From the IMG/VR virus record IMGVR_UViG_3300025141_000016, positions 124,001-188,000 of that record: a DNA stretch of 64,000 nt; one strand, given 5' to 3'. The notes under the pieces were generated by a model. The model made no database searches, was not told the origin of the DNA, and worked only from the letters and a program-made list of their open reading frames with translations. The position numbers were made by a program, and so were the translations under genes. Shown in pieces: positions 13,289 through 55,611 of the stretch (the stretch's first letter is position 1; each line of letters opens with the position of its first letter).

Positions 13289-13322
13289 GGGGGTTCAACT
13301 CCCCCTGGTATCTCCGTATGTG
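13289..13322 (+). promoter_or_regulatory. Repeated early-type promoter GGGGG-TTCAAC-N17-TATGTG with hairpin
   Basis: One of five copies (others at 53.67, 54.48, 54.97 and 55.59 kb on the minus strand); preceded by an A7 tract; upstream of gene 13371. Confidence 0.75.
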
Positions 13323-13370
13323 CGTGTACCCCCAATCCTGCGCCCCACCGAGGGGCCAACCGGAGAAGCC

Positions 13371-13637
13371 ATGTCACCCTCTTTCACTGTTGCCCCTGAC
13401 GGCACCGTCACCCCGTACCCACCCGCGAACGGCACCCACTTCACCCTTGAAGAGATGCAAACAGCGGTGGGCGGCTACGTTCAAACCGTCGGGATGGCTG
13501 ATGGTCGCTTGATGATCGTCCACGAGGACGGTCTTCTCATTGGACTCCCGCGCAACGCGATGGCATCGGCTCACTACGGCGAAGGCGCGAACATCGTTGG
13601 CACCATCCTCGTATGCCCGAGTTCGATGCTTCGGTAG
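13371..13637 (+). CDS. DUF3846-like phage protein
   Basis: FTLEEMQTAVGGYVQTV..MIVHEDGLLIGLPRNAMAS..IVGTILV pattern; RBS GGAG. Confidence 0.75.
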   Translation: MSPSFTVAPDGTVTPYPPANGTHFTLEEMQTAVGGYVQTVGMADGRLMIVHEDGLLIGLPRNAMASAHYGEGANIVGTILVCPSSMLR

Positions 13638-13652
13638 GTGCGTCAGGTCACT

Positions 13653-13672
13653 GACCCCGAGGGGGGTCTTTC
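13653..13672 (+). terminator. Rho-independent terminator
   Basis: GACCCC-GAGG-GGGGTC followed by TTTC, 15 nt after the stop. Confidence 0.6.
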
Positions 13673-13807
13673 ATCGTGCAGCACCGGTATAGGGCACACC
13701 CCGGACTGCTGTGCTGATCGCCAACTGTCAGAAATATGAGTTTTTCGTGTCCGATTTCCACCCATCACGTCGTTCACACAAGTAGCAACCCCCAGGAGTC
13801 TTCTCTC

Positions 13808-14731
13808 ATGCACGTTCTTCACGCACCCACAGCCGACCTCGCCCGTTCCATCGTACTGCCTGTCCTCACCGTCGAGGCCGAGTACGGTTCCTACGTCTGC
13901 GAAGGTCGCTTCTACACGGCAGCGCACCACCAAGGGGAAGGCCCCTTTGCGGGTCGCCACCTCCCCGGCCACGAGGGTACGGGTCGTCCCGCGCCCTGTA
14001 ACGACGACGGAATCACCATGATTGGTGAGGAAGACGTGGTTGTGGTTTCCCACATCGACCTCGACACCCTGGGCGGCTGTCTCCGTGCCACGGGTCGCCA
14101 CAACTCCCTCTTTGCAGGTGAGTTCGGCTCCTTTTGGGAGTTGGCCGAGTTCGTGGACGTGACCGGTCCTCACCACATGGCTCCTGATCACCCCGAGGCC
14201 CCACGCCTCCGAGCAGTCTGGGCGTGGCTCCAAGAGCACCGTCCCCGCTACCCTCGCGACGAGATCGTGGAAGTCACGGACCTCGTGTTGGCATTCGGTG
14301 ACGTTCTCCAGGCCATCCTCGCCGGGAACGAGGACTTCCTCGCCGCAGGTCAGGCGATGGCGGATGCGGAAGATACTCTCAACGAGGCTTCCTTCCGTTC
14401 CACCACGGATCCCGTGTGCGATGCGTACATCGTGGCGCGTGAGGCAGGTCAGTTCGTCAACCACCTCTACCGCACCCCCACAGGCATCGTCGGCTCCGCT
14501 GTCGTCGCTCTCAACACCACGATGAACAGCGTCACGGTTTCCCTGGCGAACCCCATCGAGGGTGTGAACTGTTGCGATCTGGTCCAGTCCCTCTGGGGTC
14601 CAGAAGCGGGGGGCCACGCAGGTATCGCTGGGTCGCCCCGTGGTCAGGTCATGGGATGGACTGACGTGGAAGAACTGTGTGGTGCCGTCCACGGCGCTCT
14701 CCGCGCAACCCTCAACCCCCGAGAGGCATGA
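13808..14731 (+). CDS. DHH/DHHA1-like phosphoesterase-family protein
   Basis: SHIDLDTLGG, DVTGPHH and C-terminal GGHAGIAGS (DHHA1-like); RBS AGGAG. Confidence 0.6.
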   Translation: MHVLHAPTADLARSIVLPVLTVEAEYGSYVCEGRFYTAAHHQGEGPFAGRHLPGHEGTGRPAPCNDDGITMIGEEDVVVVSHIDLDTLGGCLRATGRHNSLFAGEFGSFWELAEFVDVTGPHHMAPDHPEAPRLRAVWAWLQEHRPRYPRDEIVEVTDLVLAFGDVLQAILAGNEDFLAAGQAMADAEDTLNEASFRSTTDPVCDAYIVAREAGQFVNHLYRTPTGIVGSAVVALNTTMNSVTVSLANPIEGVNCCDLVQSLWGPEAGGHAGIAGSPRGQVMGWTDVEELCGAVHGALRATLNPREA

Positions 14732-15219
14732 TGAAAACTATCCTCAAACGCTGCACTATGACCGACGATGGGGACTTCCACGGGCACTCTTGCGAGAAGT
14801 GCGACCACGAAGTGGGGGGGAACGGTCCTGACCCTTACGTCCTCACGGACGATGAGTCCATCGTATGTGTGGTCTGCGCGTTGGGGGCACCGGAAAAACC
14901 CGTCTTCATCCTCGACCCAGCGACAACCCACGAAGAGGACACCGTAGATAAAGTCCTCACGGCTGGGTTGTGGGAACACTCCTACCTCACAGGACTCCGT
15001 GCGGCCCAGGCAGACCCCGAGTACCAAGAAGCCCAGCGCCGATGGTTCAACCTGGGCCGCGCCAGGAATGGGGAGCCCCTGGAAGGGGAGGGTGTCTGGG
15101 ACGAGGACACCGAAGGGCCGTTCTGGAGATGGTGTGACCGGCACCATCGTCCTTTCCTGATGGCTGCGTTCAAGTCCCTGTGTGACCAACTCATGGCCCC
15201 GGAGACTGCCGAGCCCTGA
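14728..15219 (+). CDS. Hypothetical protein with CxxC pairs
   Basis: ATGA overlap; CEKC, CVVC. Confidence 0.7.
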   Translation: MMKTILKRCTMTDDGDFHGHSCEKCDHEVGGNGPDPYVLTDDESIVCVVCALGAPEKPVFILDPATTHEEDTVDKVLTAGLWEHSYLTGLRAAQADPEYQEAQRRWFNLGRARNGEPLEGEGVWDEDTEGPFWRWCDRHHRPFLMAAFKSLCDQLMAPETAEP

Positions 15220-15251
15220 TTCACCACCCCAGCCCCTTCACTGATCCCGTT

Positions 15252-15292
15252 AGCCCTCCTATCCCCTCTCTGGGGGTAGGAGGGCTTTTCTT
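15252..15292 (+). terminator. 15-bp hairpin terminator overlapping the nuclease RBS
   Basis: AGCCCTCCTATCCCC-TCTCT-GGGGGTAGGAGGGCT (one G.U pair) followed by TTTCTT. Confidence 0.8.
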
Positions 15293-15294
15293 GT

Positions 15295-15669
15295 ATGGCC
15301 GAGACACCTACCCCATACGTCTACCGAGCCCAGGTCTTGTCGGTCTACGACGGGGACACCATCACGGTGATGATCGACCTGGGGTTGAGCATCAAGGTCA
15401 AAGCCTCTTGTCGGTTACTGGGGATAGACACCCCGGAGATCCGCACCAAGTCCGCTTCCGAGAAGAAACTTGCCTATGAGGCACGAGATCGGTTGCGGGG
15501 GATGGTCCTCGACAAAGAGGTGACCCTGCACTCCGTCGTCAAGCCCGACAAGTATGGCCGACTGACCGTGAAGGTCTGGAGCGACGAGCACGGGTACGTC
15601 AATGGGGTGTTGTTGGACGAGGGGTTAGCCCGCGTCTATGATGGGGGCACCCGCCAACCCTGGGGCTGA
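15295..15669 (+). CDS. Thermonuclease (staphylococcal nuclease-like, SNase)
   Basis: VYDGDTI..RLLGIDTPE..DKYGR..LLDEGLARVYDGG; no signal peptide. Confidence 0.92.
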   Translation: MAETPTPYVYRAQVLSVYDGDTITVMIDLGLSIKVKASCRLLGIDTPEIRTKSASEKKLAYEARDRLRGMVLDKEVTLHSVVKPDKYGRLTVKVWSDEHGYVNGVLLDEGLARVYDGGTRQPWG

Positions 15670-15681
15670 TTCCCCGTTTTC

Positions 15682-15696
15682 GATAGTCCGACTATA
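15682..15696 (+). promoter_or_regulatory. Putative late-promoter motif GATA-N6-CTATA
   Basis: Spacing match; contains the inverted repeat ATAGTC-C-GACTAT; 35 nt upstream of the tail tube start. Confidence 0.5.
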
Positions 15697-15731
15697 CCCA
15701 ACTGTAAGTAGCACCCGACGGAGATTTCATC

Positions 15732-16487
15732 ATGGCCAACACCGACCATTCACCGGGCCTTGGAGTTCAAGGATCCTCACAGATTTACAAGTTCGGAACC
15801 TCACCCAATACCCGGAGTGTGGTGACTCAAAAGGTGCGTGTACTTGCTCCTGCCTACGGCGCTACCAATCCGACACTGTTTCAGATTGGGGTCTTGTCCA
15901 ACTTTGGACCGACCGAGAGCCGTACTATCGAGAACGTGCGCGGAATCGGCTTTGGTGACATCATCGCGGAACTGGTGCCGGGAAATACGGAGCCCATGAC
16001 GGCTTCTATTGAACGCACCATGCTCTACCTATCAAACCTCTGGCAAGCGACGGGCTACGCTTCGGGTGTTAGCGGTCCTGTCCGATCTCTTCGGCATCAC
16101 CGTTGGCCCTTCGACATTGAGCAACAGATTGTGTTCAGTGTCATCGCAGACACAGAGATGGGTGGAGGAACGACCTCCTCAACGGACTTCGGTTCGTATG
16201 GCACCTTGGAATACTCCGGTGCCATCGGAGGTGGCGGCCCCCTTGGAAACGGAAGCGACCCAGGCTCCCACAACATCCTCATCACCTATTACGAAGGTTG
16301 CTGGTGGGGAGACTGGAGCACCGCTTACCAAAAGGACTCCGCTATGGTCATGGAGTCGGGCACGGTGACTATCACCGACGTTCACGACTTCTCCAGCGTC
16401 ACCTACGGTGAGTTCCTGGCAACAGGTAACGACCCGAGCATCGGTGAGTTCTCGTCCAATATCTTTGGGACGACTTTCAGTTCATAG
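15732..16487 (+). CDS. Tail tube protein (gp19-like fold)
   Basis: QIGVLSNF..ESRTIENVRGIG..AELVPG..ITYYEGCWW..SAMVMESGTVTITDV; position ahead of chaperones and tape measure. Confidence 0.7.
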   Translation: MANTDHSPGLGVQGSSQIYKFGTSPNTRSVVTQKVRVLAPAYGATNPTLFQIGVLSNFGPTESRTIENVRGIGFGDIIAELVPGNTEPMTASIERTMLYLSNLWQATGYASGVSGPVRSLRHHRWPFDIEQQIVFSVIADTEMGGGTTSSTDFGSYGTLEYSGAIGGGGPLGNGSDPGSHNILITYYEGCWWGDWSTAYQKDSAMVMESGTVTITDVHDFSSVTYGEFLATGNDPSIGEFSSNIFGTTFSS

Positions 16488-16557
16488 TTCAACGCCCTCT
16501 ACCTCTTGGTAGTCGGGTAGAGTCTTCCGTCGGGTAGTGTACTTTGACGGAGGACTC

Positions 16558-17676: not shown

Positions 17677-17685
17677 GGGGGGACC

Positions 17686-40100: not shown

Positions 40101-42625
40101 AAGTCACTGTCCGTTTGGAGTACGACAGTCTGGGGGCCTACGACCCGGATGCTGGGACGTTGGTCCTCAACATGTCACCGGGAGCCACCCCATACTGGAC
40201 AGACAACCTCAACACCAAGGAAGGGCAGCCCACCACCGATGTTGACTGGTACACCTTGGCGGTTAGTGGCACTCGTGTCAGCGGGATCAACTACCTTCCC
40301 ATGCAACAGATGGGGACGCATCTCCCAGCCAATAATGTGGTTGGACCCAATGAGGTCGATGATGGATTCGGGCTCGGAATAAGCCTCATCGCAGGTTTCC
40401 GAAACGTGCTTGTGGGGAACCGGAACCCCGACATTATCGACGCATACATCAGTGATGTAGGCGATGATGTGTTCAAGGACTTCAACACCCCCATCACAGG
40501 CAATCTTCAGAACACCGTATTGGGGGCTGTTGACCCCAACAGTCTTGGGGTGGGGATCCCACTTCCCAAAGACAATACCGACTTCTACCCAGTACGCGGG
40601 GAGGCGGTGTACGGCAGGATCTACGACAACACGGGGGCGGGGACTCAACAGACTGAAATGTCCGGGGTAGCGACCTACTTGGACCTGTCCCAATGGGCCT
40701 CGCTGCTCGTGGACGATGCCTGGAGCCTCATTCACTTTGGCGACACAGACACTCACGGCATCGTATTCTACGACTCCACAAACACCCTCATGGGTACGAT
40801 CCCCCTCCCCCAGCCTCCCATCGTTCCGTGCCTGTTGCCGGGGGACCGGATCGTGTTCGGGGACGACATAGACCCGGCAACAGCGGCTCCTGGCTTCTTT
40901 GCCCTGGCAGGGATCTTCTTGGAGCCATCCTTCCCCCTTCCCACCGCGAACCTTCATTTGACGGCCCCTCGGGTGGTGGCGGCTTCTTACGGGGCACTCA
41001 CCACAGCCGACGTTGGAACACGAAACGTCCACGACTACACCCCCACTGGCTCCCCCAACTTGGACAATGAGGGGGTCCACTACTTCGTGCGGCGTGTCCG
41101 ACGATGGCACGATGCCCAGAATGAGATCATCTCGGGGTTGGATCCTTTGCGGTTCGCCTATGAGATCCGCCGTGGGGTCACCGCTTCCTACTCGACAGCA
41201 TCAACCTCACGGACCTTCGTGGCCGATCTGGCGACGTATGGAGCCGCCACCAACCTGGGAGCCTTCACCAACGAGGACGTGAACATCCACGCCGGGGACA
41301 TGCTTCGGGTCTTTGACTCCACCACGGGGCTTCTTCTCGACACGGCTGAAATCGAGTCCGTTGAGGGCACCGCCACTCTACGGTTGAAGCGTCCTGGCCT
41401 GACCGAAACCATCGTGGGCGGTGAGCCCTTTGAGATTTACCTGAACCAGCCCATCATCCCCCATGAGCAATCCAATGAGCAGTTGATGGACCTCGTGACG
41501 GACTCTGTTGTGTTCCGCCGCACCGTGGACTACGCCGCAGCGGAGACAGAGGGCGGCAAGGTCGTCGCCACGGGTGAACTGTCCGACACCACGACGGGAC
41601 CGGGTGCGATTACCACCTGGGCAGAGGAGGGGGTCGAGGAAGGTGACTATGTGATCATCGACCCAGCCGGTGTCCTCTACGAAGACACCGAGAGGGGAGG
41701 CAGACCTCTTGGCGATCAGAGCGTCACCGGACGCGCAATCCACATCGCAGGTGGCCCCACCAAGCTGGATGATAACCGAGGCTTCTACAAGGTCACGGCA
41801 GTCGATAAAGACTCGTCAGGGGCCAGCTTACCGGGAACTCTTGCCGTGGACGGCGAGTCTCGCTTCTCGGACGGGAGCATTTTCGGGGAAGACCCCACTA
41901 CGGAAGGGTACGTCGTGCTGCCCCTCATCACGCAATCTGACCTAACAGGCGGGGCCGAGGGCCAGCAAGACCTCCGACCCACCGCAGAGCCCGTCCCTGT
42001 AGGCGGCTCTTACTTGGACCGGGTTACCCCCGATGACTTCAAGAGCATCGAGCCTTTCGGGTACGAGATCATCCGGCCCAACAACATTTTCTCCGAGGAC
42101 GCACTGGAACTGGTGTTGTTCATGCGGGAGAGGATGTTCTCATGGATGGAGGAGATCGTGATTTCCCGCTCCCAGAGCGGCGACTACTTCGTCTTCCAGC
42201 GGGACGACCACATCATCGACGTGGGCTCCGCGACGGACCCCCTTGCGGGACTCGGGTTGATCTCCAACATCGTGGCAGAGAGCCTTGCGGGGCTCACCGC
42301 GACGACCCCGTTCGCCAACGTATCCGACTGTTTGAGTGTGCTTGACCGACGCTTCTGGATCCTCGACTTCCGTTTGGATGCCCTGGGCTACACCCAGTTC
42401 GTAGATGATACGTGGGGGCAACGTCCTGTCCTCCCCGACCTCATCGACGGGGTGTTGAACCTTGACGACCGCTTCCGCGACCAGCGGTACTCGTGGGTGT
42501 CCTTCCGTGCCAACCGAGAGGATGGCTCCATTCAAACCGCCCGCCGAGCCGAGAACCGCCTTCCTGGCCGCCTCCAGAAGCAGCGAGAAGCGTTGCTTCG
42601 GAAGAAAGCCTTGGATGAGTCGTAG
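31169..42625 (+). CDS. Giant 3818-aa virion structural protein (baseplate wedge/fibre-like)
   Basis: Uninterrupted 11.4-kb ORF with GTG start; acidic and G/T/P/V-rich, with repeated ..GxIxF-type beta modules; in the tail operon. Confidence 0.75.
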   Translation: MGFNLDGYVLRPARVASGNSPDTNEATTGVDRSQMDGAEMATLGYTVAPTGGRFTTAVEPYGDMYRAAVLQKPESREAEETYCVFAATTGSLSTVESEFLAQSASSDAVTVVPGTLAVEGGVWNDGTDTFLVLDPGGRDISSVSSLVIIKGPIVPGAPPTYVTITDGGSPGFLSQDPSIGKVVLDSTALDPAYLNGGFSKERGDQILLVTYILGGPTFWWTRNDQDVTRFGWDGKNQRWSPLQGSLPRDLGAVNGEDEFKLTPPLTRFAVGDMLPYDDTTTDSYALVRSGLYPDSISTPLTILVVTDEEAASGTWSGSWIDPATGTAADAVVGVYSGDLLLNPTYIEANAGRTLWYNPETFVVDADGDLGEVADFYPLALVPTSIGFPALSPVPGPTDRPFLRIGSRRYLTPYAVDTDADLPTPADFPAGNFYWSRMTGRIVLSKHDIDRCTPGASTTNPTPDFSDYDIFYLGARLYYDGVSLNTQPLPVKAPTPVFDEAGLPLDGDPETVPIFGKLYIPRAVPLPPPGISGVLWVPDGSGDTPSIDEKTIPLTRPNGCGMMREIEGIGDTFFFGESYAYEKTDVEEYDEDLPVLKFKVPKNTVAVSRLQDPDMTGSPLEEYSRLQMRRRLVKGEALYFLQAQITPSVYADEARIFSRFGEPFTLLGTETLTFNVDDFAGGYKWVATTLGAGEFSAAEVAADIQATSGVPAGSVGSLRGRIFIRDADLKIGKVEIGWDQSDATDLSGPAALGFLPGWRVSLPLPAAPAPNFCWLPDNGAAMGVFRSPVNMDRRDDTPDIRAKSQFDDLLLTDNITGMPFFSINQPPLEDMPGYDEGVHFRMAIGLLTVDLKNYHTTLGVGIKYDWVFDRLVWTEEGETSATQVAFPTSTLQLDHPAILPETVSALAMDDTAFGLRVKGPLDDSYATKIRGEDFLMPGGGQPGQALLVSVEGGVKASGGCGQFTAGTTTFEDPNVPDQDDLAAEVLVGYLLHVLTGEAEGVYQITKVTSGPPTVLNVFPAFPSSQTTAQWRVYEAKPRDEIDNTLVADVQQQVMNHLPSEPFKIRLLTSTGTVGGSLVAEVADAISSNRVISLRFGLGEGGNANEATPAYLVRGVKMGTVVATGLEIPDTSDLHFQTSLAGGTAYFSFRVGAAEFTSGVNLVMVAVAGTPAAGTVEIVAGSGEVVFADDVVSDLSGSTVFYDQQFLNPDDLTAGECEINASDGSINISTSDAGTYAGETAYFVEEMVTVNDLDVKTSPVSGSILFKKPLRAMQIVETNYFQADTNGDKATDTDGNYIEVTEFLPLIVKLEVATRIDDYTFSFNPTGRTYSEVVDPFMWVGVELQNFAGIETAFIEVDEDLGIYLIKLTSAVESTDEVKINYGVLEAFGGESAYTVSTPPVYRKPFFLLEGQTSFDLETDRSADFPVGHLLMLGPQPLYIKTVAYDITTDLTTVTITPDPLGELGSRAVGRDSGLTVSDFPVSVTLSPTDTEGFMPTLDTSTATGTPLLAVDRGQLEVVFYGDVRQYTKPNHLLEIEECPYIIINSSMSDDGRNTIVEIATPAYKAHDNSNTVRISMRPVYQPSPMEFAGIAPFVTSEEYNLFLMGATESGVGVPGKELIEGTHYTTDAATGEIIFQTPTQPPLNPGEWLHFRYTRQVVVNPLVKDDALLYPLYKGSYLYMTVPSVPNRLLGSVLRAKYTYRNPDSFYFSTLPMRNYLGDVAKVSAAKGGSAPSGGPVLAFPGESNMGSQGAMGLRGEAQDYRDQDRGGRVYVEFFNGVIVAFEQVLEAMDGRIIGDRDGKFLFFLGRDKRYPPPGYEDSISGELNPRLIWREVIENWSPSDYTDNDGWYMEADPVFDPTTAEIPDTGERPGAPDGITPDPHSLSFYTGRQRHRVKNDMDDRLLIGFGRPRGLAFLFPKFDVPGKFKDMWQDHEYSRLFPEKTTHFTRLFPGLEAVMGATGFTDPGYYSSGRKIEVPGPEPGETTEQKVKTRKTVNGVICNPALGDIQNISDVTAEDRHPRARVWAYYPLGSAELDAALGTTTASPPSATFVATPVPLSEFPINPDTGFPDITQLLSQGGGISDLESGDAALSTPAFVGSTTAGEAPRINFGKPDGTIYSLTADSDLNGVYIGEVQAGCVLVLVDVTGAPLAGSSVFVNETIPLEDVISADGGYGDTVFCGPTSGTLDPTSVPTQPTLDETAEATQGLPDYRIQFDLKVGRRSGTFIDASLPTADDAFPFPLQKWFGQNPPSPLSCVEGVVEFVNTSTQPLQLPCLLGEDKDDSGDYQIPYMRTTNTELVVLGEVAASLVLLFIDTSAALPLPAGVPAIEQQDLSLAVYPNEIVVNNGTIVQATDYPGYALNPATLYVGAAAADGDLRPVETAGAYTANSGIGDVRRFDLILSQADQALVGAGSIPAGMTGILTVGDVEQTAPSTDPNRPSTLETPRFVTPTATGMEHKYTIRGFAANVADDTGDNGFHITEVSGGGQRDTVFHFGTVPLIRLTELAALIPGTPPAAGVGNALVIRIYDADPSLAPATDPFIGALVIPWDDPGEVMYAWNEAAAATTAITTDPAGVGVVFTADTVSIQCVVAQPSIMVALGLVVSTHYDFTLDFDTYFDPDTVAFTSGVLVGGAGLGSLTCEVGRDRLTFKEALAFNLAKPRGYSPANDPGNTNHGHELGVQIAVHEVTCQGVQGFTVNSPAAINGAPAPGAAGFGTHYLTLLERMGPSPDASVSALVEYTGTWDGSDGSLRLMAWEGYENTPLAADVSTIKFAGVPSSNANETAEIAAGFGVMADKGFIDTTMGLDLDGNRDYIYGAALFFPLVPDVEAGDIVVVDAGTTSSEAVKAGTYLVRHAVSYDAGDAYATPAASIPFVQAPLRPARQWDDATAPVPKAEAKLAGTPSGSGGFDCVNVDFPTILEVDSVTNEVTLQGVVPVPGTPNGHGWADPATVPNNRHVHLILGDKYAEYDSATSAWHIKQVTVRLEYDSLGAYDPDAGTLVLNMSPGATPYWTDNLNTKEGQPTTDVDWYTLAVSGTRVSGINYLPMQQMGTHLPANNVVGPNEVDDGFGLGISLIAGFRNVLVGNRNPDIIDAYISDVGDDVFKDFNTPITGNLQNTVLGAVDPNSLGVGIPLPKDNTDFYPVRGEAVYGRIYDNTGAGTQQTEMSGVATYLDLSQWASLLVDDAWSLIHFGDTDTHGIVFYDSTNTLMGTIPLPQPPIVPCLLPGDRIVFGDDIDPATAAPGFFALAGIFLEPSFPLPTANLHLTAPRVVAASYGALTTADVGTRNVHDYTPTGSPNLDNEGVHYFVRRVRRWHDAQNEIISGLDPLRFAYEIRRGVTASYSTASTSRTFVADLATYGAATNLGAFTNEDVNIHAGDMLRVFDSTTGLLLDTAEIESVEGTATLRLKRPGLTETIVGGEPFEIYLNQPIIPHEQSNEQLMDLVTDSVVFRRTVDYAAAETEGGKVVATGELSDTTTGPGAITTWAEEGVEEGDYVIIDPAGVLYEDTERGGRPLGDQSVTGRAIHIAGGPTKLDDNRGFYKVTAVDKDSSGASLPGTLAVDGESRFSDGSIFGEDPTTEGYVVLPLITQSDLTGGAEGQQDLRPTAEPVPVGGSYLDRVTPDDFKSIEPFGYEIIRPNNIFSEDALELVLFMRERMFSWMEEIVISRSQSGDYFVFQRDDHIIDVGSATDPLAGLGLISNIVAESLAGLTATTPFANVSDCLSVLDRRFWILDFRLDALGYTQFVDDTWGQRPVLPDLIDGVLNLDDRFRDQRYSWVSFRANREDGSIQTARRAENRLPGRLQKQREALLRKKALDES

Positions 42626-42894: not shown

Positions 42895-42897
42895 TTT

Positions 42898-46223: not shown

Positions 46224-46286
46224 CCCCCCTGACGGTAGGTAGTCGATAACCCTCCAAGGACACAAACCTCCTGTGAGGAAGCCACG

Positions 46287-50183: not shown

Positions 50184-50244
50184 AAAGTGTATGTCTGCAA
50201 GGAAGTGTCGCGAGGATACGCGGCTGTCCTGAAGAGAGTTCCCG

Positions 50245-50436: not shown

Positions 50437-50538
50437 CCTGTGCGTAGAGGTGGAGGCAGCCCTATTCGCCTTGTGTGGGTGTGTTTCATCCTTGGGGGAG
50501 ATAGCCAAGGGTAGTGTGCCTGGGGCACAGGAGGTTCA

Positions 50539-51615
50539 ATGACTGTTTACGCCGAGTACATCTGGATCGATGGGGTCCAGCCCACACAAACGGTACGGTC
50601 GAAAACCAAGGTGCTCTGGGGGCACAACGACGGGGAAGTCTTTTGCGACAACCCCCTCGATCCTGACTGCTACCCCCATTGGGGGCATGACGGCTCCAGT
50701 ACCGGACAGGCCGAGGGCGGTGACTCCGATTGCGGGTTGGTCCCCGTCCGGGTCTTCAAGGATCCCATCCGAGGGGGCAACCATGTCCTCATCATGTGCG
50801 AGGTCACTGATGCAGACGGCACCCCTCACGAGTCCAACTCCCGAGCCCTGCTGCGTGAGGTCATTGACTGCGTTGGGGTGGAAGCCCAAAAGTGCTGGTT
50901 CGGCATGGAGCAGGAGCACACCCTGTTCCGAGGTTCACGCCCTCTGGGTTTCGGGGATGACCGCCGTTTCCCCCCATCGCAAGGCCCCTACTACTGTGGG
51001 GTCGGAGCCGATGAGGTCTATGGGCGCGATCTCATTGAGGAACACATGCGGGCATGTGTCGAGGCGGGCATCAGAATCAGTGGCATAAACGCCGAGGTGA
51101 TGCCCGGACAGTGGGAGTTCCAAGTGGGGCCGTTGCCCCCGCTGGAGGCAGGGGATCATCTCTGGGTGGCCCGCTGGCTCCTCTACCGACTCGGTGAGAA
51201 GCACGGAATCCACGCCACACTTGACCCCAAGCCTGTAGCTGGAGACTGGAACGGTGCCGGGATGCACACCAACTTTTCTACGGCGGCGATGCGAGAGGCA
51301 GGCGGCATCCAACACATCGAAGATTGGTGCCTCCGGGCGCGGGATCACGTCGAGGGACACCTCGCGGCCTACGGAGACGGCATCGAAGCCCGTCTCACCG
51401 GGAAGCACGAAACGTGTTCCTACCACCAGTTCAAGTGGGGGGTGAGTGACCGCACCGCCAGCATCCGAATCCCGATGGGAACAGCCAAGGATGGTTACGG
51501 GTACTTGGAAGACCGTAGGCCCAACGCAAACGCTTGCCCCTACGAAGTGGCATCCGTCATGCTCCGCACAGCCTTCAGTCAATGGCCCCAGAACGTAGTC
51601 CGACCTGCGTGTTGA
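50539..51615 (+). CDS. glnII: Glutamine synthetase, type II (GlnII/eukaryote-like)
   Basis: AEYIWIDG, DGSSTGQA, GPYYCGVG, NAEVMPGQWEFQVGP, DWNGAGMHTNFST, RLTGKHET, RTASIRIP, YLEDRRP; RBS AGGAGG. Confidence 0.95.
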   Translation: MTVYAEYIWIDGVQPTQTVRSKTKVLWGHNDGEVFCDNPLDPDCYPHWGHDGSSTGQAEGGDSDCGLVPVRVFKDPIRGGNHVLIMCEVTDADGTPHESNSRALLREVIDCVGVEAQKCWFGMEQEHTLFRGSRPLGFGDDRRFPPSQGPYYCGVGADEVYGRDLIEEHMRACVEAGIRISGINAEVMPGQWEFQVGPLPPLEAGDHLWVARWLLYRLGEKHGIHATLDPKPVAGDWNGAGMHTNFSTAAMREAGGIQHIEDWCLRARDHVEGHLAAYGDGIEARLTGKHETCSYHQFKWGVSDRTASIRIPMGTAKDGYGYLEDRRPNANACPYEVASVMLRTAFSQWPQNVVRPAC

Positions 51616-51624
51616 GGGGGGTGC

Positions 51625-51825: not shown

Positions 51826-51908
51826 GAAAAGATCCAGTCCCTCTCCCGCTTCCCGTTTGTTCCGAACGCCTGGGGTGTCAGGAAGTGGTGAGGGGGGCTC
51901 TGCTCCCG

Positions 51909-52202
51909 TCAGATGAACAGGGGAGGTTGGTCGTCCAGGGGCCTCACCACAGCCTGGGCGTATTCAGCAGGTGACAGTTCGACCTCGTTGCCATTAGGGT
52001 CTGTCGCTGCCATGACCCAATAGGGGGCCGTCTTCCACTCCAGGGAGTCCAGAGGCACCCCATCAGAGGTGTGGGTGCCATCGGGGGGTCCAAGGACCAC
52101 ACGCCCGTTGCAGACGGCCCAGGGGAACTGGTCACCGACGGCAAGGTGAACGGTCAGACGTTGGTCCCCCCGTCGGAGGGTGATGGTCTTATCCGGCATC
52201 AT
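51909..52202 (-). CDS. Hypothetical protein
   Basis: Its start overlaps the end of the 52189-53610 gene. Confidence 0.6.
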   Translation of the reverse strand: MMPDKTITLRRGDQRLTVHLAVGDQFPWAVCNGRVVLGPPDGTHTSDGVPLDSLEWKTAPYWVMAATDPNGNEVELSPAEYAQAVVRPLDDQPPLFI

Positions 52203-53610
52203 TCGCTGTCTCCTCGCCCAACATGTAGGTGTGGGACTCAACGGCTCCGGCTTCTGTGCGGGAACCTTTCTGATAAGGCATTACCCACCGACGCTTGGCT
52301 GCGAGTTTTTCCCGCTGCTCATTGGCGCTCTTTTGGGCCTGTTCATGGGCCTTCCGCAACGCCGTCAGGTGAGGGAGATGGACCGCAAGGTCTTCGGGCT
52401 CTGACAGCCCCTCGGTACTCTGCACCATCTCGTCGTATGCTTCGGAAGCTGCCTGGACCTGGGCTTCTGCTGCCGCGATGCGACGGCGGATGGTATCCCG
52501 ACGAGGCCACCAGTGACCACGGACCCAATGCCTACGCTGGGGTGACCCAGAGGCGTTCTTGGAGCCTGTCGTCCCCCCAAAGGCCACAGAGCGACCTATC
52601 CAGACCACGTTGTCCACGGGCAGGGCAGCGAGACGCTTACGGAGATGCCGTCCCTTACGCTTCCGCTGATTCTTCATGCGGTCCAGGGCGGCTTGAATCT
52701 TTGAGCGTTCCTGGGTTGCTTCGACACATTCCGGGTCCACCTGTTGATCGGCACCCTCGGAGTCGAGGTAGAGCAGCGCGTTGAGGATGATACGGACCAC
52801 CGTGAACACACTGTCCGCGATCTTCTGGTCGTGGTCAGTTCCGCGACCCCAGGTAGCCGCGAGTCCCGGTGCATCCACAGGGCCGAGAGCCATGGGGTCG
52901 AGAGTCATAGGGGCAGTTCCCCCCAAGGCGACCGTGGGCTCACCCTGTTCGTTGCGGTACAGCCCCCGGAGCGCATCAGTCTGGTCCCTGCCGCCCTTCG
53001 CCAAGACGGAGAGGAGATAGGTTTCCACGTCCATCTTTCCCATCTCGTTGAGGTCCAGGGCCAACCAGATCGACGCATCATCCCCTGGCATCATGGATGC
53101 GTCATTTTCCATGCCCCAAAGGTAGAAGTGAATCACTCCCTTGTCTTGGTCGGGGGAGGGGGGAATCACGAGTGCAGACTTCCCGTCTGCACCCATCTTG
53201 TACCCTTCCTCGCCATGGCTGTGGCGAAGGAAGACTCCCCCCACCTTATGCCAACGGGTGTCTTCGCCGCCCCATATCTCGTGCTCACATCCCGGCAGCG
53301 CGATGTACTGGCTCGTGTAGGGGATCCGAATGTCCTCCACCCCCACCTCTTCCAGTGAGGTACGCGCCAGTGCTTCCTGCATAGGGGCCGGGATCACGAA
53401 CGACTGATTCCCTGACAGCCGGTAGTGGGCGAGGTGCAGCGTCAGGCAGTAGAGGGATCGGTGAAAGCCCACTCCTGGCACGTTGAAAAGGGCCTGGAGA
53501 GAACGAGGGTCAACCTCCCCTCTGACCAAACCGTCGATGATCCGCTCGTGAAACTCATCCCGAGGTACTTCGCGGGGCATCATTCGGATTTCGTTGAGTG
53601 CAGTGCTCAT
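52189..53610 (-). CDS. Conserved phage protein with RRHWVRGHW..RWVMP motif
   Basis: ATG behind AAGGA, downstream of a repeated promoter; motif resembles a widespread phage family of unknown function. Confidence 0.8.
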   Translation of the reverse strand: MSTALNEIRMMPREVPRDEFHERIIDGLVRGEVDPRSLQALFNVPGVGFHRSLYCLTLHLAHYRLSGNQSFVIPAPMQEALARTSLEEVGVEDIRIPYTSQYIALPGCEHEIWGGEDTRWHKVGGVFLRHSHGEEGYKMGADGKSALVIPPSPDQDKGVIHFYLWGMENDASMMPGDDASIWLALDLNEMGKMDVETYLLSVLAKGGRDQTDALRGLYRNEQGEPTVALGGTAPMTLDPMALGPVDAPGLAATWGRGTDHDQKIADSVFTVVRIILNALLYLDSEGADQQVDPECVEATQERSKIQAALDRMKNQRKRKGRHLRKRLAALPVDNVVWIGRSVAFGGTTGSKNASGSPQRRHWVRGHWWPRRDTIRRRIAAAEAQVQAASEAYDEMVQSTEGLSEPEDLAVHLPHLTALRKAHEQAQKSANEQREKLAAKRRWVMPYQKGSRTEAGAVESHTYMLGEETANDAG

Positions 53611-53653
53611 AGTGTTCCTTGACCGCTCAATGCGGAACTGGATGGGGGTTTCT

Positions 53654-53688
53654 CCTATACGGAGAAGCACGGGGGAGTTGAACCCCCC
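53654..53688 (-). promoter_or_regulatory. Repeated promoter TTCAAC-N17-TATAGG
   Basis: Reverse complement reads GGGGGG TTCAAC TCCCCCGTGCTTCTCCG TATAGG. Confidence 0.75.
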
Positions 53689-53690
53689 CA

Positions 53691-53734
53691 AACGAAGAAA
53701 ACCCACCCCTCCCCAAAATGGGGGTGGGGTGGGT
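53691..53734 (-). terminator. Rho-independent terminator directly upstream of the promoter
   Basis: 13-bp GC stem with one mismatch (53701-53734) followed on the minus strand by TTTTCTTCG. Confidence 0.7.
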
Positions 53735-53883
53735 TCCCTCGCGAGGTGGTCTACTGGTCACTGGGACGGAGGACAGTCCCCTCCCAGATCGTGGACCCGC
53801 AAGCGCGGGAGATAACAGGCGAAGGGGGCTGGGCTTACACGGCTCAACTACCGAGGCTCAACGGCCCCCTTCGCGATAAGGGT

Positions 53884-54252
53884 TCAGATGGTACAGGCTT
53901 CGGCCAGTGCGACCATCTCGGCTCGGGCGGCTCGCCAGTTACGGCCAGCCACTCGTCCCTCCCAAGACCGGCCCTCGCTGCCGAGGCCGAGGCCGACGAA
54001 CACGTCAGGGTAGGAGTCGTAGTGCGCGGAGTTGCACAGGGTCGTGAGCCGACCCTCGACGGCTTCGTCTCCGGTCAAGAGACGGGCCAGTTCGTAGCGC
54101 ACCGGGAAGTCCGGTCGGCCCTTGTCGTAGTGCTTACGACGCGGCCAGGACACCACGAGCACACCGTTGGCGGCTTCGTGGAGGATAGTGAGGTCACCAC
54201 CAACGCAGTTGACGGTGAGCCGGTCGCCTTCACGGCGGGCGATGATTCCCAT
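53884..54252 (-). CDS. Hypothetical protein
   Basis: ATG behind GGAG; protein-like composition. Confidence 0.65.
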   Translation of the reverse strand: MGIIARREGDRLTVNCVGGDLTILHEAANGVLVVSWPRRKHYDKGRPDFPVRYELARLLTGDEAVEGRLTTLCNSAHYDSYPDVFVGLGLGSEGRSWEGRVAGRNWRAARAEMVALAEACTI

Positions 54253-54464
54253 GTCAGTCTCCAAAGCAGGGGGTCAAAGAAAGCGCAGATGCCGCCACCC
54301 AGCCCGATGCCTCGGGCATCTTGGGTGTCGTCGTGTGCATCCCGCATAAATGTCGCTTCAAGGTATCAACCCGCTTGAGGCACCGGGCGTTGCTCTACCG
54401 TCATCCCTGCTCTGGCAACCGTCAAGCAGGGGGCTTTGGCTGGTCGTTGAATCCCCCGTCCACT

Positions 54465-54500
54465 CTTATAGGGAGATAGGGGGGGTGAGTTGAACCCCCC
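54465..54500 (-). promoter_or_regulatory. Repeated promoter TTCAAC-N18-TATAAG
   Basis: Reverse complement GGGGGG TTCAAC TCACCCCCCCTATCTCCC TATAAG; upstream A7 tract. Confidence 0.75.
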
Positions 54501-54522
54501 TACAGCGTTTTTTTCGCGAAAA

Positions 54523-54903
54523 TCAGAGGGTCATCATCATTTCGCTGTTTCGCCGTGCCGTATCCTCGGCATCAAAGTTCCAGTTTCTCCAGTTGAAGGT
54601 GTGGAATGTGAGCCGTCTCGTCCGACCACCCCGTCCAGGGTCAACAGTGACAGTCTTCTTGCCGACGCTCACGATGGTTCCCGTGTACGACAGGTTGTAG
54701 CTGTCGTACTCGACCGTATCCCCGACCCGGAACGTGCGCGTGTAGGGGTGGGTCACCATCTCACCGATTTCGGCCATCCATCGGGGCTTGGTACCGTGGA
54801 GAGTGATTTCGGCTCCGGTCCCTCGACCGGGGGTGACAGTCGCATATCCGGTGGCTTCGTCGCCCCGGTATTCGACCGCAACCGTTAGGGTTTTGGTCGT
54901 CAT
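54523..54903 (-). CDS. Conserved phage protein (YDSYNLSYTG motif, SH3-like beta barrel?)
   Basis: FRVGDTVEYDSYNLSYTGTIVSVGKKTV..FNWRN; ATG behind GGAGG. Confidence 0.75.
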   Translation of the reverse strand: MTTKTLTVAVEYRGDEATGYATVTPGRGTGAEITLHGTKPRWMAEIGEMVTHPYTRTFRVGDTVEYDSYNLSYTGTIVSVGKKTVTVDPGRGGRTRRLTFHTFNWRNWNFDAEDTARRNSEMMMTL

Positions 54904-54945
54904 TGGTAACCTCCAGTGGGCAGAAAGAGTAGAGGGGAAGGGAGC

Positions 54946-54989
54946 CCCCTCCACTTATATACGGAGATAGGGGGGCGAGTTGAACCCCC
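54946..54989 (-). repeat. 44-bp promoter repeat, copy A (TTCAAC-N17-TATATA)
   Basis: Identical to 55568-55611. Confidence 0.9.
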
Positions 54990-55004
54990 TTCGGGGAAGA
55001 AATG

Positions 55005-55538
55005 TCAGACAGGGCAGGTCGTGTCGGCAGGGGCATAGGTGAGCCAGATCGCACGGGCATCGCGGGGGGACAGTTCATCCAGCGCAGCCCGGAGTTCGCG
55101 CATCTCACGCTCGCCCGCTGCCCAACACCTATGGTCATCAGACATGTGCGAGTACCAGTCCATGCCTTCCAGCAACCGTCGGGCACGGTAGGCCGGTTCA
55201 GCGGCTCGCCGCGCCGACTCGGCATCAGCATCGGCCAGGAGTGAGAGAACCGCAGCGGCAGCGTCGGCAGCAGTCGCTCCCGTCGAGTAAACGAGGTGAC
55301 GGGTGACGGGGTTCATTGCCGTCCCTCCCCATTCACCCGTAGCCGGAGCGAGGGTGACATGGGCGATAGCCCCATGGTCAGTGGCGAGCAGCCGCAGGAT
55401 GCCAGTCACATCAGAGTAGTCCATCGGGATCAAGGTGCCATCGGCCAGGACCAACGCCCCCCGTGTGGGACCACAGTAGGGTCGCGAGGAGAGGGAGCCG
55501 GAGCGGAGCCAGCATCGAATGTTGCGTGCGTAGAGCAT
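55005..55538 (-). CDS. Ala-rich hypothetical protein flanked by the 44-bp repeats
   Basis: ATG behind GGAG; lies between two identical promoter repeats. Confidence 0.7.
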   Translation of the reverse strand: MLYARNIRCWLRSGSLSSRPYCGPTRGALVLADGTLIPMDYSDVTGILRLLATDHGAIAHVTLAPATGEWGGTAMNPVTRHLVYSTGATAADAAAAVLSLLADADAESARRAAEPAYRARRLLEGMDWYSHMSDDHRCWAAGEREMRELRAALDELSPRDARAIWLTYAPADTTCPV

Positions 55539-55567
55539 GGGGAATCTCCAAAAAGGCGAAGGGAGAA

Positions 55568-55611
55568 CCCCTCCACTTATATACGGAGATAGGGGGGCGA
55601 GTTGAACCCCC
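55568..55611 (-). repeat. 44-bp promoter repeat, copy B (TTCAAC-N17-TATATA)
   Basis: Identical to 54946-54989. Confidence 0.9.

What the first reader, a model, noticed from the sequence alone, without database searches (positions are those of the whole stretch)
13289..55611. Five-copy hairpin promoter whose -35 box sits in a loop identical to a tRNA T-arm
Seen: consensus GGGGG-TTCAAC-T-C(C/G/A)CCC..TCTCC(G/C)-TAT at 13289(+), 53654, 54465, 54956 and 55578(-), with 17 nt (once 18) between TTCAAC and the TAT-starting hexamer; each lies upstream of a gene. In two copies GGGGG-TTCAACT-CCCCC is a perfect 5-bp stem with a 7-nt TTCRANY loop, and the following 7+1 nt then CCG mirror tRNA acceptor/discriminator/CCA spacing. 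Established: sigma70 geometry; T4-type PeSL promoter-stem-loop cassettes; N4 hairpin promoters. Inference: dual-function elements (promoter plus terminator, RNA-processing signal or extruded hairpin), possibly derived from a tRNA 3' end.
Basis: partly seen in the sequence, partly recalled or inferred. Interest (0 to 1): 0.65.

Follow-up and report, generated by a model that had tools for sequence, protein, structure and literature searches.

The report
Repeated promoter of a giant phage
The five repeats are copies of a 23-copy, phage-specific promoter in a very large uncultivated phage, probably read with the phage's own sigma factor; the hairpin and the tRNA look-alike are side effects of the sequence and show no sign of being functional parts.

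Summary
All five sites exist at the stated coordinates with 17-nt (once 18-nt) hexamer spacing. They are 5 of 23 near-identical copies (plus 2 half-variants) in a 297-kb phage record; a shuffled genome gives 0. All 25 sites are intergenic and point the same way as the downstream gene. Twenty lie 16-106 nt before the called start; the other five distances reflect my gene calls or long leaders. An A/T-rich tract sits where an UP element would.

Related huge phages carry multi-copy elements with the same skeleton (GTT...fixed spacing...CCGTA) but a different -35 half. Two of them have unrelated spacers and no stem.

The phage record shows no recognisable RNA polymerase. It does encode a divergent ECF-like sigma factor. 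Its region 2 is conserved and its region 4 variable, mirroring the conserved -10 and variable -35 halves.

The stem is not supported as a functional unit:
- The exact T-arm geometry occurs in only 8 of 25 copies.
- No pair shows compensatory change.
- Pairing is no better in register than when slid.
- Natural copies with no possible stem keep the rest of the motif.
- Swapping spacers between copies barely changes stability.

tRNA ancestry has no support. Verdict: a real phage promoter class and a new member of a known kind. Expression data were unavailable.

The parts
13289..13322 (+). Promoter copy P1: G-run plus TTCAAC (-35 half), C-run spacer, CCGTATGTG (-10 half). Perfect 5-bp stem with a 7-nt loop in this copy.
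13270..13279 (+). A-rich tract upstream of P1, at the position of an UP element (about -55 to -45).
13342..13356 (+). Leader stem-loop GCCCC-ACCGA-GGGGC. It is followed by CAA, GGAG (13362-13365) and ATG (13371). It belongs to a covarying 5'-UTR hairpin family.
13371..13637 (+). First gene downstream of P1 (88 aa, no family assigned).
53654..53687 (-). Promoter copy P2. Perfect 5-bp stem with a 7-nt loop; spacer subtype CCCCCGTGCTTC.
53691..53733 (-). Intrinsic-terminator-like hairpin plus T-tract immediately upstream of P2. The T-tract doubles as the A/T-rich upstream tract.
   Evidence: (-25.7 kcal/mol)
53623..53635 (-). Leader stem-loop CCGC-ATTGA-GCGG, upstream of the ribosome-binding site of the 473-aa gene.
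52189..53610 (-). Gene downstream of P2 (473 aa from ATG 53610; no Pfam family for the part tested).
54465..54499 (-). Promoter copy P3. It is the only copy with one extra spacer base, and it has CCCTATA in place of CCGTATA.
53884..54252 (-). Gene downstream of P3 (122 aa). About 210 nt lie between the element and the start codon.
54956..54989 (-). Promoter copy P4. Spacer subtype TCGCCCCCCTATC; the stem is possible only with a 9-10-nt loop.
54523..54903 (-). Gene downstream of P4 (126 aa). Weak match to a phage ProQ C-terminal-like domain (E 0.0045, below the curated cut-off).
55578..55611 (-). Promoter copy P5. It is identical to P4 through 12 nt past the -10 half, which suggests cassette duplication or conversion.
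55005..55538 (-). Gene downstream of P5 (177 aa, no family).

Best explanation
The repeats are one class of transcription promoters of a very large uncultivated phage. Each element has four parts:
- an A/T-rich upstream tract, in some copies the T-tail of the preceding gene's terminator;
- a -35 half, GGGGGTTCAAC;
- a 15-16-nt C-rich spacer;
- a -10 half centred on CCGTA(TA).

Transcription should start a few bases downstream, in the conserved aGtg.a stretch. In about half the copies the transcript then runs through a conserved leader hairpin and a GGAG ribosome-binding site.

This layout suits a bacterial multisubunit polymerase carrying a sigma-70-family factor. The most likely factor is the phage's own divergent ECF-like sigma (P0001, 306 aa, genome 107568-108488, minus strand) bound to host core polymerase. 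Its region 4 would read the -35 half and its region 2 the CCGTA half.

The class drives non-structural genes and small ORFans. A second, compact motif class sits before the large genes.

The G-run belongs to the -35 recognition sequence, and the C-run is a moderately conserved spacer feature. Together they can pair, which produces the hairpin and, in a third of copies, a T-arm look-alike. I take this to be a by-product.

Shown: the repeat family, its placement and orientation, its relatives, the sigma-family membership of P0001, and the lack of stem covariation.
Inferred: that it initiates transcription, where transcription starts, and which sigma reads it.
For: Promoter behaviour.
- 25 of 25 sites are intergenic and co-oriented with the downstream gene. 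Twenty lie 16-106 nt before the called start. The other five distances (214-871 nt) reflect my gene calls or long leaders; the window starts were re-checked.
- A/T content is enriched at about -60 to -48.
- Clear terminators lie directly upstream of some copies.

Bipartite nature.
- A related phage, G003, has 23 copies of GGGGTTCC-N15-CCGTA. All have exactly 15-nt spacers of unrelated sequence, and the reversed control gives 0.
- G002 has 16 copies of CGTTAAAA-N9-GCTTCCGTAAG, control 0.
- L037 and L039 carry further variants, and L036 carries the same motif.

Not a primary sigma.
- The TAT hexamer never ends in T.
- TTCAAC-N15-CGTA fits the ECF pattern: AAC in the -35 element, CGTA in the -10 element, spacers of 14-17 nt (PMC5758882).

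Polymerase and sigma.
- The 297-kb record has no beta, beta-prime or T7-type polymerase domain.
- The profile of the P0001 family matches a sigma-H structure across regions 2-4 (3mzy, E 1.6e-4).
- 7 of 15 members give weak Sigma70_r2 hits and 4 give Sigma70_ECF hits.
- For the alignment-based model (pLDDT 77), the best structural matches are almost all sigma factors.
- The nearest protein-atlas clusters include viral ECF-sigma clusters.
- Region 2 is 85% identical among the six closest phages and region 4 only 46%. This parallels the invariant CCGTA and the variable -35 half.
- The sigma gene's own upstream region lacks the motif.

Precedent. Phage 7-11 sigma gp47 reads a bipartite GTAAtg-16-aCTA, and phiEco32 gp36 reads tAATGTAtA (PMC8948821).
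Against: - There are no expression data.
- The link between P0001 and this class is correlative. All relatives were found through P0001 itself, so there is no negative control.
- L037 and L038 have nearly identical region-4 helices but different -35 halves.
- A second conserved motif class and the block upstream of the sigma gene also contain a GTA core and could be the sigma's true targets.
- The genes served (ligase, kinase, phosphoesterase, ORFans) look early or middle. A phage-made sigma cannot read the very first genes unless it is injected.
- The record is only 67% complete, and the probable fuller 552-kb contig could not be searched. An unrecognised phage polymerase is therefore not excluded.
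- The spacer is far more conserved within this phage than a sigma alone would require.
- The stem is more stable than with permuted spacers, so a role for the C-run, structural or not, remains open.
Confidence: 0.55

Rival explanations
1. Early promoters read by a host sigma factor, organised as PeSL-like mobile regulatory cassettes. The A/T tract, boxes and polyG...polyC stem-loop together act as promoter plus attenuator and as recombination sites that shuffle small ORFan genes.
For: - The architecture matches the published PeSL description, including stems that overlap the -35 box and GGGG...CCCC arms (PMC2839356, PMC4122927).
- The downstream genes are small ORFans and nucleic-acid enzymes.
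- Discrete spacer subtypes are shared by copies up to 100 kb apart, and P4 and P5 are identical beyond the -10 half. This fits cassette spread by recombination.
- The score distribution is bimodal, with no weak copies.
Against: - The boxes do not fit a primary sigma: the -10 hexamer never ends in T, and TTCAAC matches TTGACA at 3 of 6 positions.
- The -35 half differs between closely related phages, which is not expected for a fixed host factor.
- The stem is not followed by a T-run, and separate terminators lie upstream.
- The host is unknown.
Confidence: 0.2
2. The hairpin is functional. One version is a DNA cruciform or single-strand structure that gates access to the -35 box. The other is an RNA stem in read-through transcripts that stops, stabilises or marks them for processing.
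For: - 20 of 25 copies can form a stem of -4 kcal/mol or better.
- Over 58 distinct elements from several metagenomes, the stem is more stable than with permuted spacers (-5.7 against -3.8 kcal/mol, p about 1e-8).
- A few copies extend the complementarity into the variable flanks, and one looks like a compensated G:C to A:T change.
- The swap test is marginal, not flat (p about 0.06).
Against: - No pair shows compensatory change in the 25 copies. Pairing is 82.9% in register, 93.1% when slid by -1 and about 82% when slid by 2. One pair is broken in 13 of 23 copies.
- 7 of 58 distinct elements have essentially no stem, including spacers beginning TCGGGGG, yet keep both boxes.
- Flank-spacer pairing is not above swapped controls (p about 0.17).
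- Relatives G002 and G003 lack the stem.
- No T-run follows the stem.
Confidence: 0.15
3. Promoters for an unrecognised phage-encoded RNA polymerase. Candidates are an N4-like virion enzyme that reads hairpins, a single-subunit enzyme, or a divergent multisubunit enzyme. It would be encoded in the missing part of the genome or among the large ORFans.
For: - About 40 nt are conserved, including bases around the presumed start, as for phage polymerase promoters.
- TATAGGAG and TATAGAAG resemble the start region of T7/SP6-type promoters (my recollection, not tested).
- The window holds a 3818-aa ORF with no known family.
- The record is 67% complete.
Against: - No polymerase domain of any type is found in the 297 kb. 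The T7-type search had no positive control, so it is weak.
- The 3818-aa ORF has no match to any solved structure sequence, N4 polymerase included.
- The bipartite -35/-10 layout with a variable spacer in relatives and an UP-like tract is the signature of a sigma-dependent enzyme.
- N4 hairpins have 3-nt loops, and their stems are obligatory.
Confidence: 0.07
4. The element descends from, or mimics, the 3' half of a tRNA (T-arm, acceptor strand, discriminator, CCA).
For: - The loop TTCAACT fits the T-loop pattern TTCRANY.
- 8 of 25 copies have the 5-bp stem with a 7-nt loop, followed by 7+1 nt and CCG.
- In two copies outside the window the flanks extend the stem to a minihelix-like 11-12 bp.
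Against: - No tRNA or tmRNA is found in the 297 kb.
- Rfam finds nothing at gathering scores. One tRNA-like hit at E 7.9 appears at a single site.
- The end is always CCG, never CCA.
- The required 5' strand pairs at 1, 2, 5, 2, 1, 3, 5 and 6 of 7 positions, and at 1 and 3 in the two window copies.
- 17 of 25 copies lack the register.
- Relatives have GTTAAAA, GTTGGAG or GTTCC in place of the loop.
Confidence: 0.02

Closest known systems
Promoters of phage-encoded sigma factors (Salmonella phage 7-11 gp47: GTAAtg-16-aCTA; coliphage phiEco32 gp36: tAATGTAtA), PMC8948821
   Same: - A phage without its own polymerase encodes a divergent sigma-70-family factor.
- It carries a multi-copy, phage-specific consensus in front of a gene class.
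- The consensus differs between related phages, while the genome positions are kept.
   Different: - Here the assignment of sigma to promoter is inferred, not shown.
- The element is much longer and includes a conserved spacer.
- The genes served look non-structural, not late.
- The phage is several times larger and has at least one further motif class.
ECF sigma promoters of bacteria (e.g. Bacillus subtilis sigma-W: tgaAAC ... CGTA), PMC5758882
   Same: - AAC ends the -35 element and CGTA lies in the -10 element.
- The spacer is within the 14-17-nt range.
- A spacer sequence adjoining the -35 element can modulate recognition.
   Different: - The -35 halves of the related phages lack AAC (GTTCC, GTTAAAA, GTTGGAG).
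- The G-run and the extended -10 context (TCTCCGTATAGG) have no counterpart.
PeSL (promoter-early stem-loop) cassettes of T4-type phages, PMC2839356 and PMC4122927
   Same: - An A/T-rich tract, -35/-10 boxes and a polyG...polyC stem that can overlap the -35 box.
- Many near-identical copies before small ORFans.
- Close association with terminators.
   Different: - PeSL promoters are near-consensus sigma-70 promoters, and their stems were shown to terminate transcription.
- Here the boxes are not sigma-70-like, the stem lacks a T-run and is dispensable in natural copies, and recombination between copies was not examined.
N4 early promoters (hairpin promoters read by the virion RNA polymerase)
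   Same: A short G+C stem lies within a phage promoter.
   Different: - N4 needs a 5-7-bp stem with a 3-nt loop and a giant virion single-subunit polymerase (my recollection of the literature).
- Here the loops are 7-10 nt, the stem is optional, and no such polymerase is detectable.

Membership tests
Sigma-70-family (ECF-type) dependent bipartite promoter | Two conserved blocks at fixed spacing, with a spacer free to vary | tested here: met
   The hexamers are 17 nt apart (once 18) in 23 copies. In relative G003, all 23 copies have exactly 15 nt of unrelated spacer. G002 has 16 copies with variable 9-nt inner spacers.
Sigma-70-family (ECF-type) dependent bipartite promoter | Intergenic, upstream of and co-oriented with genes | tested here: met
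   25 of 25 sites are intergenic and co-oriented. Twenty lie 16-106 nt before the called start. The window starts were verified.
Sigma-70-family (ECF-type) dependent bipartite promoter | AAC in the -35 element, CGT(A) in the -10 element, spacer of 14-17 nt | tested here: inconclusive
   This phage and L036 have TTCAAC-N15-CGTATA (PMC5758882). Related phages keep CCGTA but have GTTCC, GTTAAAA or GTTGGAG at -35.
Sigma-70-family (ECF-type) dependent bipartite promoter | A cognate sigma factor is available | tested here: met
   The P0001 family profile matches a sigma-H structure (E 1.6e-4) across regions 2-4. Members give weak Pfam r2, ECF and r4_2 hits. The best structural matches are sigma factors. 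That this sigma reads this class is not shown.
Sigma-70-family (ECF-type) dependent bipartite promoter | Transcription starts about 6-9 nt downstream of the -10 element | not testable with these tools
Primary sigma-70 promoter | -10 hexamer TAnnnT, with A at position 2 and T at position 6; -35 close to TTGACA | tested here: not met
   The sixth base is G or A in all 23 copies. TTCAAC matches TTGACA at 3 of 6 positions. The base after CCGTA is not conserved across relatives.
PeSL cassette (T4-type phages) | A/T-rich tract, promoter boxes and an adjacent or overlapping G/C stem-loop, in many copies before ORFans | tested here: met
   compared with PMC2839356. The stem is present in about 80% of copies.
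PeSL cassette (T4-type phages) | Near-consensus sigma-70 early promoter | tested here: not met
   See the primary sigma-70 row.
PeSL cassette (T4-type phages) | The stem-loop terminates transcription; cassettes mediate insertions and deletions between related genomes | not tested
   Termination needs an assay. By sequence, no T-run follows the stem, and separate terminators lie upstream of some copies. Comparison of insertions and deletions between closely related genomes was not done.
N4-type hairpin promoter | An obligatory short stem with a 3-nt loop, read by a giant virion single-subunit polymerase | tested here: not met
   Loops are 7-10 nt and the stem is absent in 4 of 25 copies. No polymerase family match was found (though that search had no positive control). 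The 3818-aa ORF has no match among solved structures.
tRNA-derived or tRNA-like element | Recognised as tRNA, tmRNA or tRNA-like by structure models | tested here: not met
   ARAGORN finds 0 genes in the window and in the 297 kb. Rfam gives 0 at gathering scores, and a single tRNA-like hit at E 7.9.
tRNA-derived or tRNA-like element | T-arm (5-bp stem, 7-nt loop), a paired acceptor strand and a 3' CCA, kept across copies | tested here: not met
   The register is present in 8 of 25 copies. Acceptor pairing is 1-6 of 7, and the end is always CCG. The stem shows no covariation.

The most novel reading that the evidence does not exclude
The G-run/-35/C-run stem is a real regulatory device of a sigma-dependent promoter. 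When extruded in supercoiled DNA, or formed in read-through RNA, it would hide or expose the -35 box or stop upstream transcripts. Each cassette would then insulate its gene and switch with the state of the phage DNA, giving a PeSL-like module in a lineage of half-megabase phages. The stem-less natural variants would be a differently regulated subclass.
Probability: 0.12. Interest if true: 0.55.

Novelty: new member of a known kind. Interest (0 to 1): 0.3.

Why it matters
The result gives a usable transcription map for an uncultivated, very large phage:
- one promoter class for non-structural genes (23 copies);
- a second, compact class before the large genes;
- a candidate phage sigma factor whose conserved and variable domains parallel the conserved and variable promoter halves across a family of huge phages.

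This is a testable case of sigma and promoter evolving together. The promoter consensus can also be used to annotate relatives and to find more of them in metagenomes.

It does not change how promoters are understood. The eye-catching tRNA resemblance is a coincidence of a G-run, a -35 box and a C-rich spacer.

Tried and rejected
- Known phages: megablast of 6 kb against the phage collection found nothing.
- Exact-pattern scans of viral contigs returned only a second assembly of the same phage. G001 has identical site spacings and lies wholly within G000. A looser scan returned two single chance hits.
- T7-type polymerase search: no hit, but the family rang in none of the control genomes, so that negative is weak.
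- Structure: the single-sequence prediction of P0001 failed (pLDDT 34). The alignment-based model worked, but its Foldseek E-values are weak (0.016 and above). I rely on the profile match together with the uniform sigma-factor ranking.
- Sigma-70-type consensus upstream of the sigma gene: none.
- Host: three short metagenome-assembled contigs (Terriglobia, Altiarchaeales, an uncultured bacterium) carry sigma relatives. This is too weak to name a host.
- My first pattern for the G002 promoter had a spacing slip and found nothing. It was corrected.
- The 552-kb metagenome contig that probably holds the fuller genome is not held by the genome search.
- A transcription-factor operator or a neutral repeat was considered and rejected. 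There is no dyad symmetry beyond G-run/C-run, and orientation with downstream genes is strict.
- Matching the region-4 helix to the -35 sequence phage by phage was rejected as evidence, because L037 and L038 have nearly the same helix but different -35 halves.
- Complex prediction was not used, because no protein-protein claim is made.
- Gene coordinates outside the verified window starts come from my own crude ORF caller.

Full report
1. THE OBSERVATION

The five sites are real and correctly placed. They lie at 13289-13322 (+), 53654-53687 (-), 54465-54499 (-), 54956-54989 (-) and 55578-55611 (-). TTCAAC and the TAT-starting hexamer are 17 nt apart, and 18 nt in the 54499 copy. Two copies (13289 and 53687) have the perfect GGGGG/CCCCC stem around the loop TTCAACT.

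The 12-mer GGGGGTTCAACT, with up to one mismatch, occurs 6 times against 0.69 expected. The sixth match (36633-36644, -) lies inside a 3818-aa ORF and lacks the second half, so it is a chance match.

2. CONTEXT

The window is bases 124001-188000 of a 297,104-bp virus record. The record has about 60% G+C, is classed as linear, and is estimated 67% complete. It has no close relative among deposited phages.

Genome-wide there are 23 full copies and 2 variants that keep the first half but have a different second half. A position-weight scan that allows one base of spacer slack scores those 23 copies at 42-61 bits. It finds nothing between 20 and 42 bits and nothing in a shuffled genome.

Its consensus is aG-GGGGG-TTCAAC-TC.CCC...tATCTCCGTATAgg-aGtg.a. 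An A/T-rich tract precedes it at 8-20 nt before the G-run, which is about -60 to -48 if TTCAAC is the -35 hexamer.

3. PLACEMENT

I called genes with a simple codon-usage ORF caller.
- All 25 sites are intergenic and point the same way as the gene downstream.
- Twenty lie 16-106 nt before the called start.
- The other five distances (214-871 nt) come from my caller picking too early a start (for example 13289), from missed small genes, or from genuinely long leaders.
- The five window starts were verified by hand: 13371, 53610, 54252, 54903 and 55538.

In some copies a clear terminator hairpin with a T-tail ends just before the G-run. Examples are window 53691-53733 and genome 118704 and 207606. 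In other copies there is only an A-rich or T-rich tract. No T-run follows the G5/C5 stem itself.

The genes served are non-structural:
- a MoxR-type AAA+ ATPase and a VWA protein;
- a P-loop kinase;
- an NAD-dependent DNA ligase;
- a metallophosphoesterase;
- a SWIM-finger protein;
- many small ORFans.

No copy lies in the blocks of very large ORFs.

4. RELATIVES

A second assembly (G001) has the same site spacings in reverse and is the same phage, so it is not independent.

Homologues of the phage's sigma-like protein P0001 led to 16 loci in other large phage contigs, up to 536 kb. The closest ones carry their own multi-copy elements with the same skeleton.

| Relative | Sigma identity | Element | Copies |
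|---|---|---|---|
| L036 | 66% | same motif | 2 in 20 kb |
| G002 (L038 phage) | 67% | CGTTAAAA-N9-GCTTCCGTAAG | 16; reversed control 0 |
| L037 | 63% | GGTGGTTGGAGC...TTCCCGTACCTA | |
| L039 | 56% | GGGGTTCCCGACCCCCCC...CCCGTAAGTA | |
| G003 (L040 phage) | 50% | GGGGTTCC-N15-CCGTA, spacers all exactly 15 nt and unrelated in sequence | 23; control 0 |

The family-wide core is therefore GTT, a fixed distance, then CCGTA, preceded by an A/T tract.
- The G-run belongs to the conserved first half in most lineages.
- The stem and the T-loop match do not carry over. G002 has no G-run, and G003 has no C-run.

5. WHICH POLYMERASE

The record contains no beta, beta-prime or T7-type polymerase domain. 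The T7-type search had no positive control, so that negative is weak. The 3818-aa ORF matches no Pfam family and no solved structure.

The TAT hexamer never ends in T, and the bases after CCGTA are not conserved across relatives. A primary sigma-70 reading therefore fails. TTCAAC-N15-CGTA does fit the ECF pattern: AAC at -35, CGTA at -10, spacers of 14-17 nt (PMC5758882).

The phage encodes two sigma-related proteins.

P0001 is 306 aa and lies at genome 107568-108488 on the minus strand.
- By eye it has regions 2 and 4 behind an N-terminal extension of about 130 aa.
- Alone it gives only weak family hits.
- A profile of 15 homologues (A1) matches a sigma-H structure across regions 2-4 at E 1.6e-4.
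- 7 of 15 members hit Sigma70_r2 and 4 hit Sigma70_ECF.
- The alignment-based model has pLDDT 77. Its best structural matches are almost all sigma factors, at weak E-values.
- The nearest protein-atlas clusters include viral ECF-sigma clusters.

P0002 is 202 aa and lies at genome 271749-272357. It is a tandem region-4 protein next to a weakly NusG/KOW-like gene.

Among the six closest phages, region 2 of P0001 is 85% identical and region 4 is 46%. This parallels the invariant CCGTA and the variable first half. The sigma gene's own upstream region lacks the motif and has a different conserved block.

This is circumstantial. All relatives were found through P0001, and L037 and L038 have nearly the same region-4 helix but different first halves.

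The characterised precedents are phage 7-11 gp47 (bipartite GTAAtg-16-aCTA) and phiEco32 gp36 (tAATGTAtA). In both, starts lie 6-9 bp from the promoter element (PMC8948821).

6. THE HAIRPIN

In the 25 copies:
- The exact 5-bp stem with a 7-nt loop occurs in 8.
- A displaced stem with a 9-10-nt loop occurs in most others.
- Four have essentially none (GGGCCGG, GGCCTCC and CTGGC spacers), yet the rest of the element is intact.

Counted on the alignment (A4):
- The T-arm register has 82.9% paired cells. Slid registers give 93.1% (-1) and about 82% (-2, +2).
- None of the five pairs shows a compensatory change.
- One pair is broken in 13 of 23 copies.

The leader hairpin of the same transcripts makes a useful contrast. 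It has 98.9% paired cells against 24-53% when slid, and all five pairs change on both sides.

One metagenome scan left both arms unspecified and added about 33 distinct real copies from other samples.
- Over 58 distinct elements the stem is more stable than with permuted spacers (-5.7 against -3.8 kcal/mol, p about 1e-8). The contiguous C-run is therefore a real feature.
- Seven elements have no stem, including spacers that begin TCGGGGG.
- Swapping spacers between copies hardly lowers stability: native -5.85, chimeric -5.59, with 305 of 5000 permutations at least as stable.
- Pairing between the variable flank and the spacer is not above swapped controls (839 of 5000).

I conclude that stem potential follows from a G-run in the -35 half facing a moderately conserved C-run. 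It is common but dispensable, and copies do not maintain it by compensation. A role is not excluded; I give it about 0.15.

7. THE tRNA IDEA

TTCAACT does fit TTCRANY, and the 7+1+CCG count is right in the copies with the T-arm register. The evidence against ancestry is strong:
- There is no tRNA or tmRNA in the window or in the 297 kb.
- Rfam finds nothing at gathering scores, and only one tRNA-like hit (E 7.9) at one site.
- The end is always CCG.
- The 5' strand needed for an acceptor helix pairs at 1-6 of 7 positions, and at 1 and 3 in the two window copies.
- Relatives replace the loop sequence.

This is a coincidence.

8. COMPARISON WITH KNOWN SYSTEMS

The closest functional analogues are the promoters of phage-encoded sigma factors. 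The closest architectural analogue is the PeSL cassette of T4-type phages. A PeSL has an A/T tract, promoter boxes and a polyG...polyC stem that may overlap the -35 box, and it occurs in many copies before ORFans (PMC2839356, PMC4122927).

It is not a member of that family as defined. The boxes are not sigma-70-like, and the stem lacks the features of a terminator. Shared spacer subtypes between distant copies, and the identity of P4 and P5 beyond the -10 half, do suggest spread of cassettes by duplication or conversion.

9. VERDICT

This is a real, multi-copy, phage-specific promoter class. My confidence in each part:

| Claim | Confidence |
|---|---|
| It is a promoter | about 0.9 |
| It is read by a sigma-dependent multisubunit polymerase | about 0.75 |
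| The sigma is P0001 | about 0.45-0.5 |
| The stem is incidental | about 0.75 |
| tRNA ancestry | below 0.03 |

It is a new member of a known kind, of modest interest. The transcription start, the timing and the reading factor are inferred, because no expression data could be obtained.

Noticed in passing
window 13342-13356 (+), 53623-53635 (-); genome 37679, 96584, 111526, 112184, 113951, 116912, 203482, 207520, 209335, 210590, 211153; also L036, L037, L038: A conserved 5'-UTR stem-loop: a 5-bp stem, the loop AYYGA closed by C-G, then C(A/C)A, GGAG and the start codon. On 19 copies from four phages all five pairs show compensatory changes (98.9% paired; 24-53% when slid). The full pattern occurs 12 times against 1.7 +/- 1.4 in dinucleotide shuffles. 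Twelve of 13 copies lie 52-111 nt downstream of a promoter copy. It is probably a translational operator or a protein-binding site, and it is structurally better supported than the promoter hairpin. The instances were chosen by requiring a stem, so the paired percentage is biased; the enrichment and the unselected invariant C after the stem are not.
   Followed up: partly
window 10081-10096 (+) and 46232-46247 (+); 21 further intergenic copies in the genome: A second promoter-like class, tCGGTAGG-N4-CTAT. There are 31 copies against 5.6 +/- 2.1 in shuffles, 23 of them intergenic and co-oriented. Most lie 28-147 nt before large genes (850, 1193, 1778 and 1829 aa). It is present in nearly the same form in L036, L037, L038 and L040. 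It is possibly the late class, and the factor that reads it is unknown.
   Followed up: partly
L009:1159-2079 (-) = genome 107568-108488; upstream block in alignment A3: The sigma gene (P0001) has its own conserved upstream block in four phages, GGGGGGTaaGG..N13..TCGGTAyTGTG. It differs from both motif classes but shares a GTA core.
   Followed up: partly
L010:1366-1974 (+) and L010:825-1373 (+) = genome about 271.2-272.4 kb: A 202-aa protein with two sigma region-4 domains and no region 2 (Sigma70_r4, E 6e-15). It follows a gene with weak NusG/KOW similarity. This may be a pair of transcription modifiers.
   Followed up: partly
genome 200.8-203.1 kb, 212.7 kb, 219.5 kb (outside the window; L052): Clusters of the palindrome GTGACAGTCAC (often ACGTGACTGTCACGT) in a few intergenic regions. 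Four copies lie directly upstream of promoter copy 203033. They look like operators or iterons.
   Followed up: no
window 7822-8835 (+): A 337-aa protein with a strong match to the actin-like Volactin family (Pfam E 2e-75), unusual cargo for a phage. The window also holds a glutamine-synthetase-like gene (50539-51615) and an N6/N4 DNA methylase (62707-63762, -).
   Followed up: no
window 31169-42625 (+): A 3818-aa ORF with no Pfam family and no sequence match to any solved structure. It lies in a run of very large ORFans (18931-48839).
   Followed up: partly
metagenome contig Ga0080013_1000001 (loci L059, L066, L074, L076-L078, L082, L088): A 552,571-bp contig carries 22 promoter copies whose 160-nt contexts are identical to this phage. 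It is probably the fuller genome, which would make this a half-megabase phage. It could not be searched as a whole.
   Followed up: partly
window 53884-54464 (-): About 210 nt lie between promoter P3 and the start of the 122-aa gene, far longer than the other leaders. This leaves room for a small RNA or a small unannotated ORF.
   Followed up: no
L049 and L046/L047 (related phage contigs): L049 is rich in tRNA T-arm-like words (GGTTCGAATCC and similar), which suggests a tRNA gene cluster in that relative. L046/L047 hold a dense array of a repeat seen up to 27 times.
   Followed up: no
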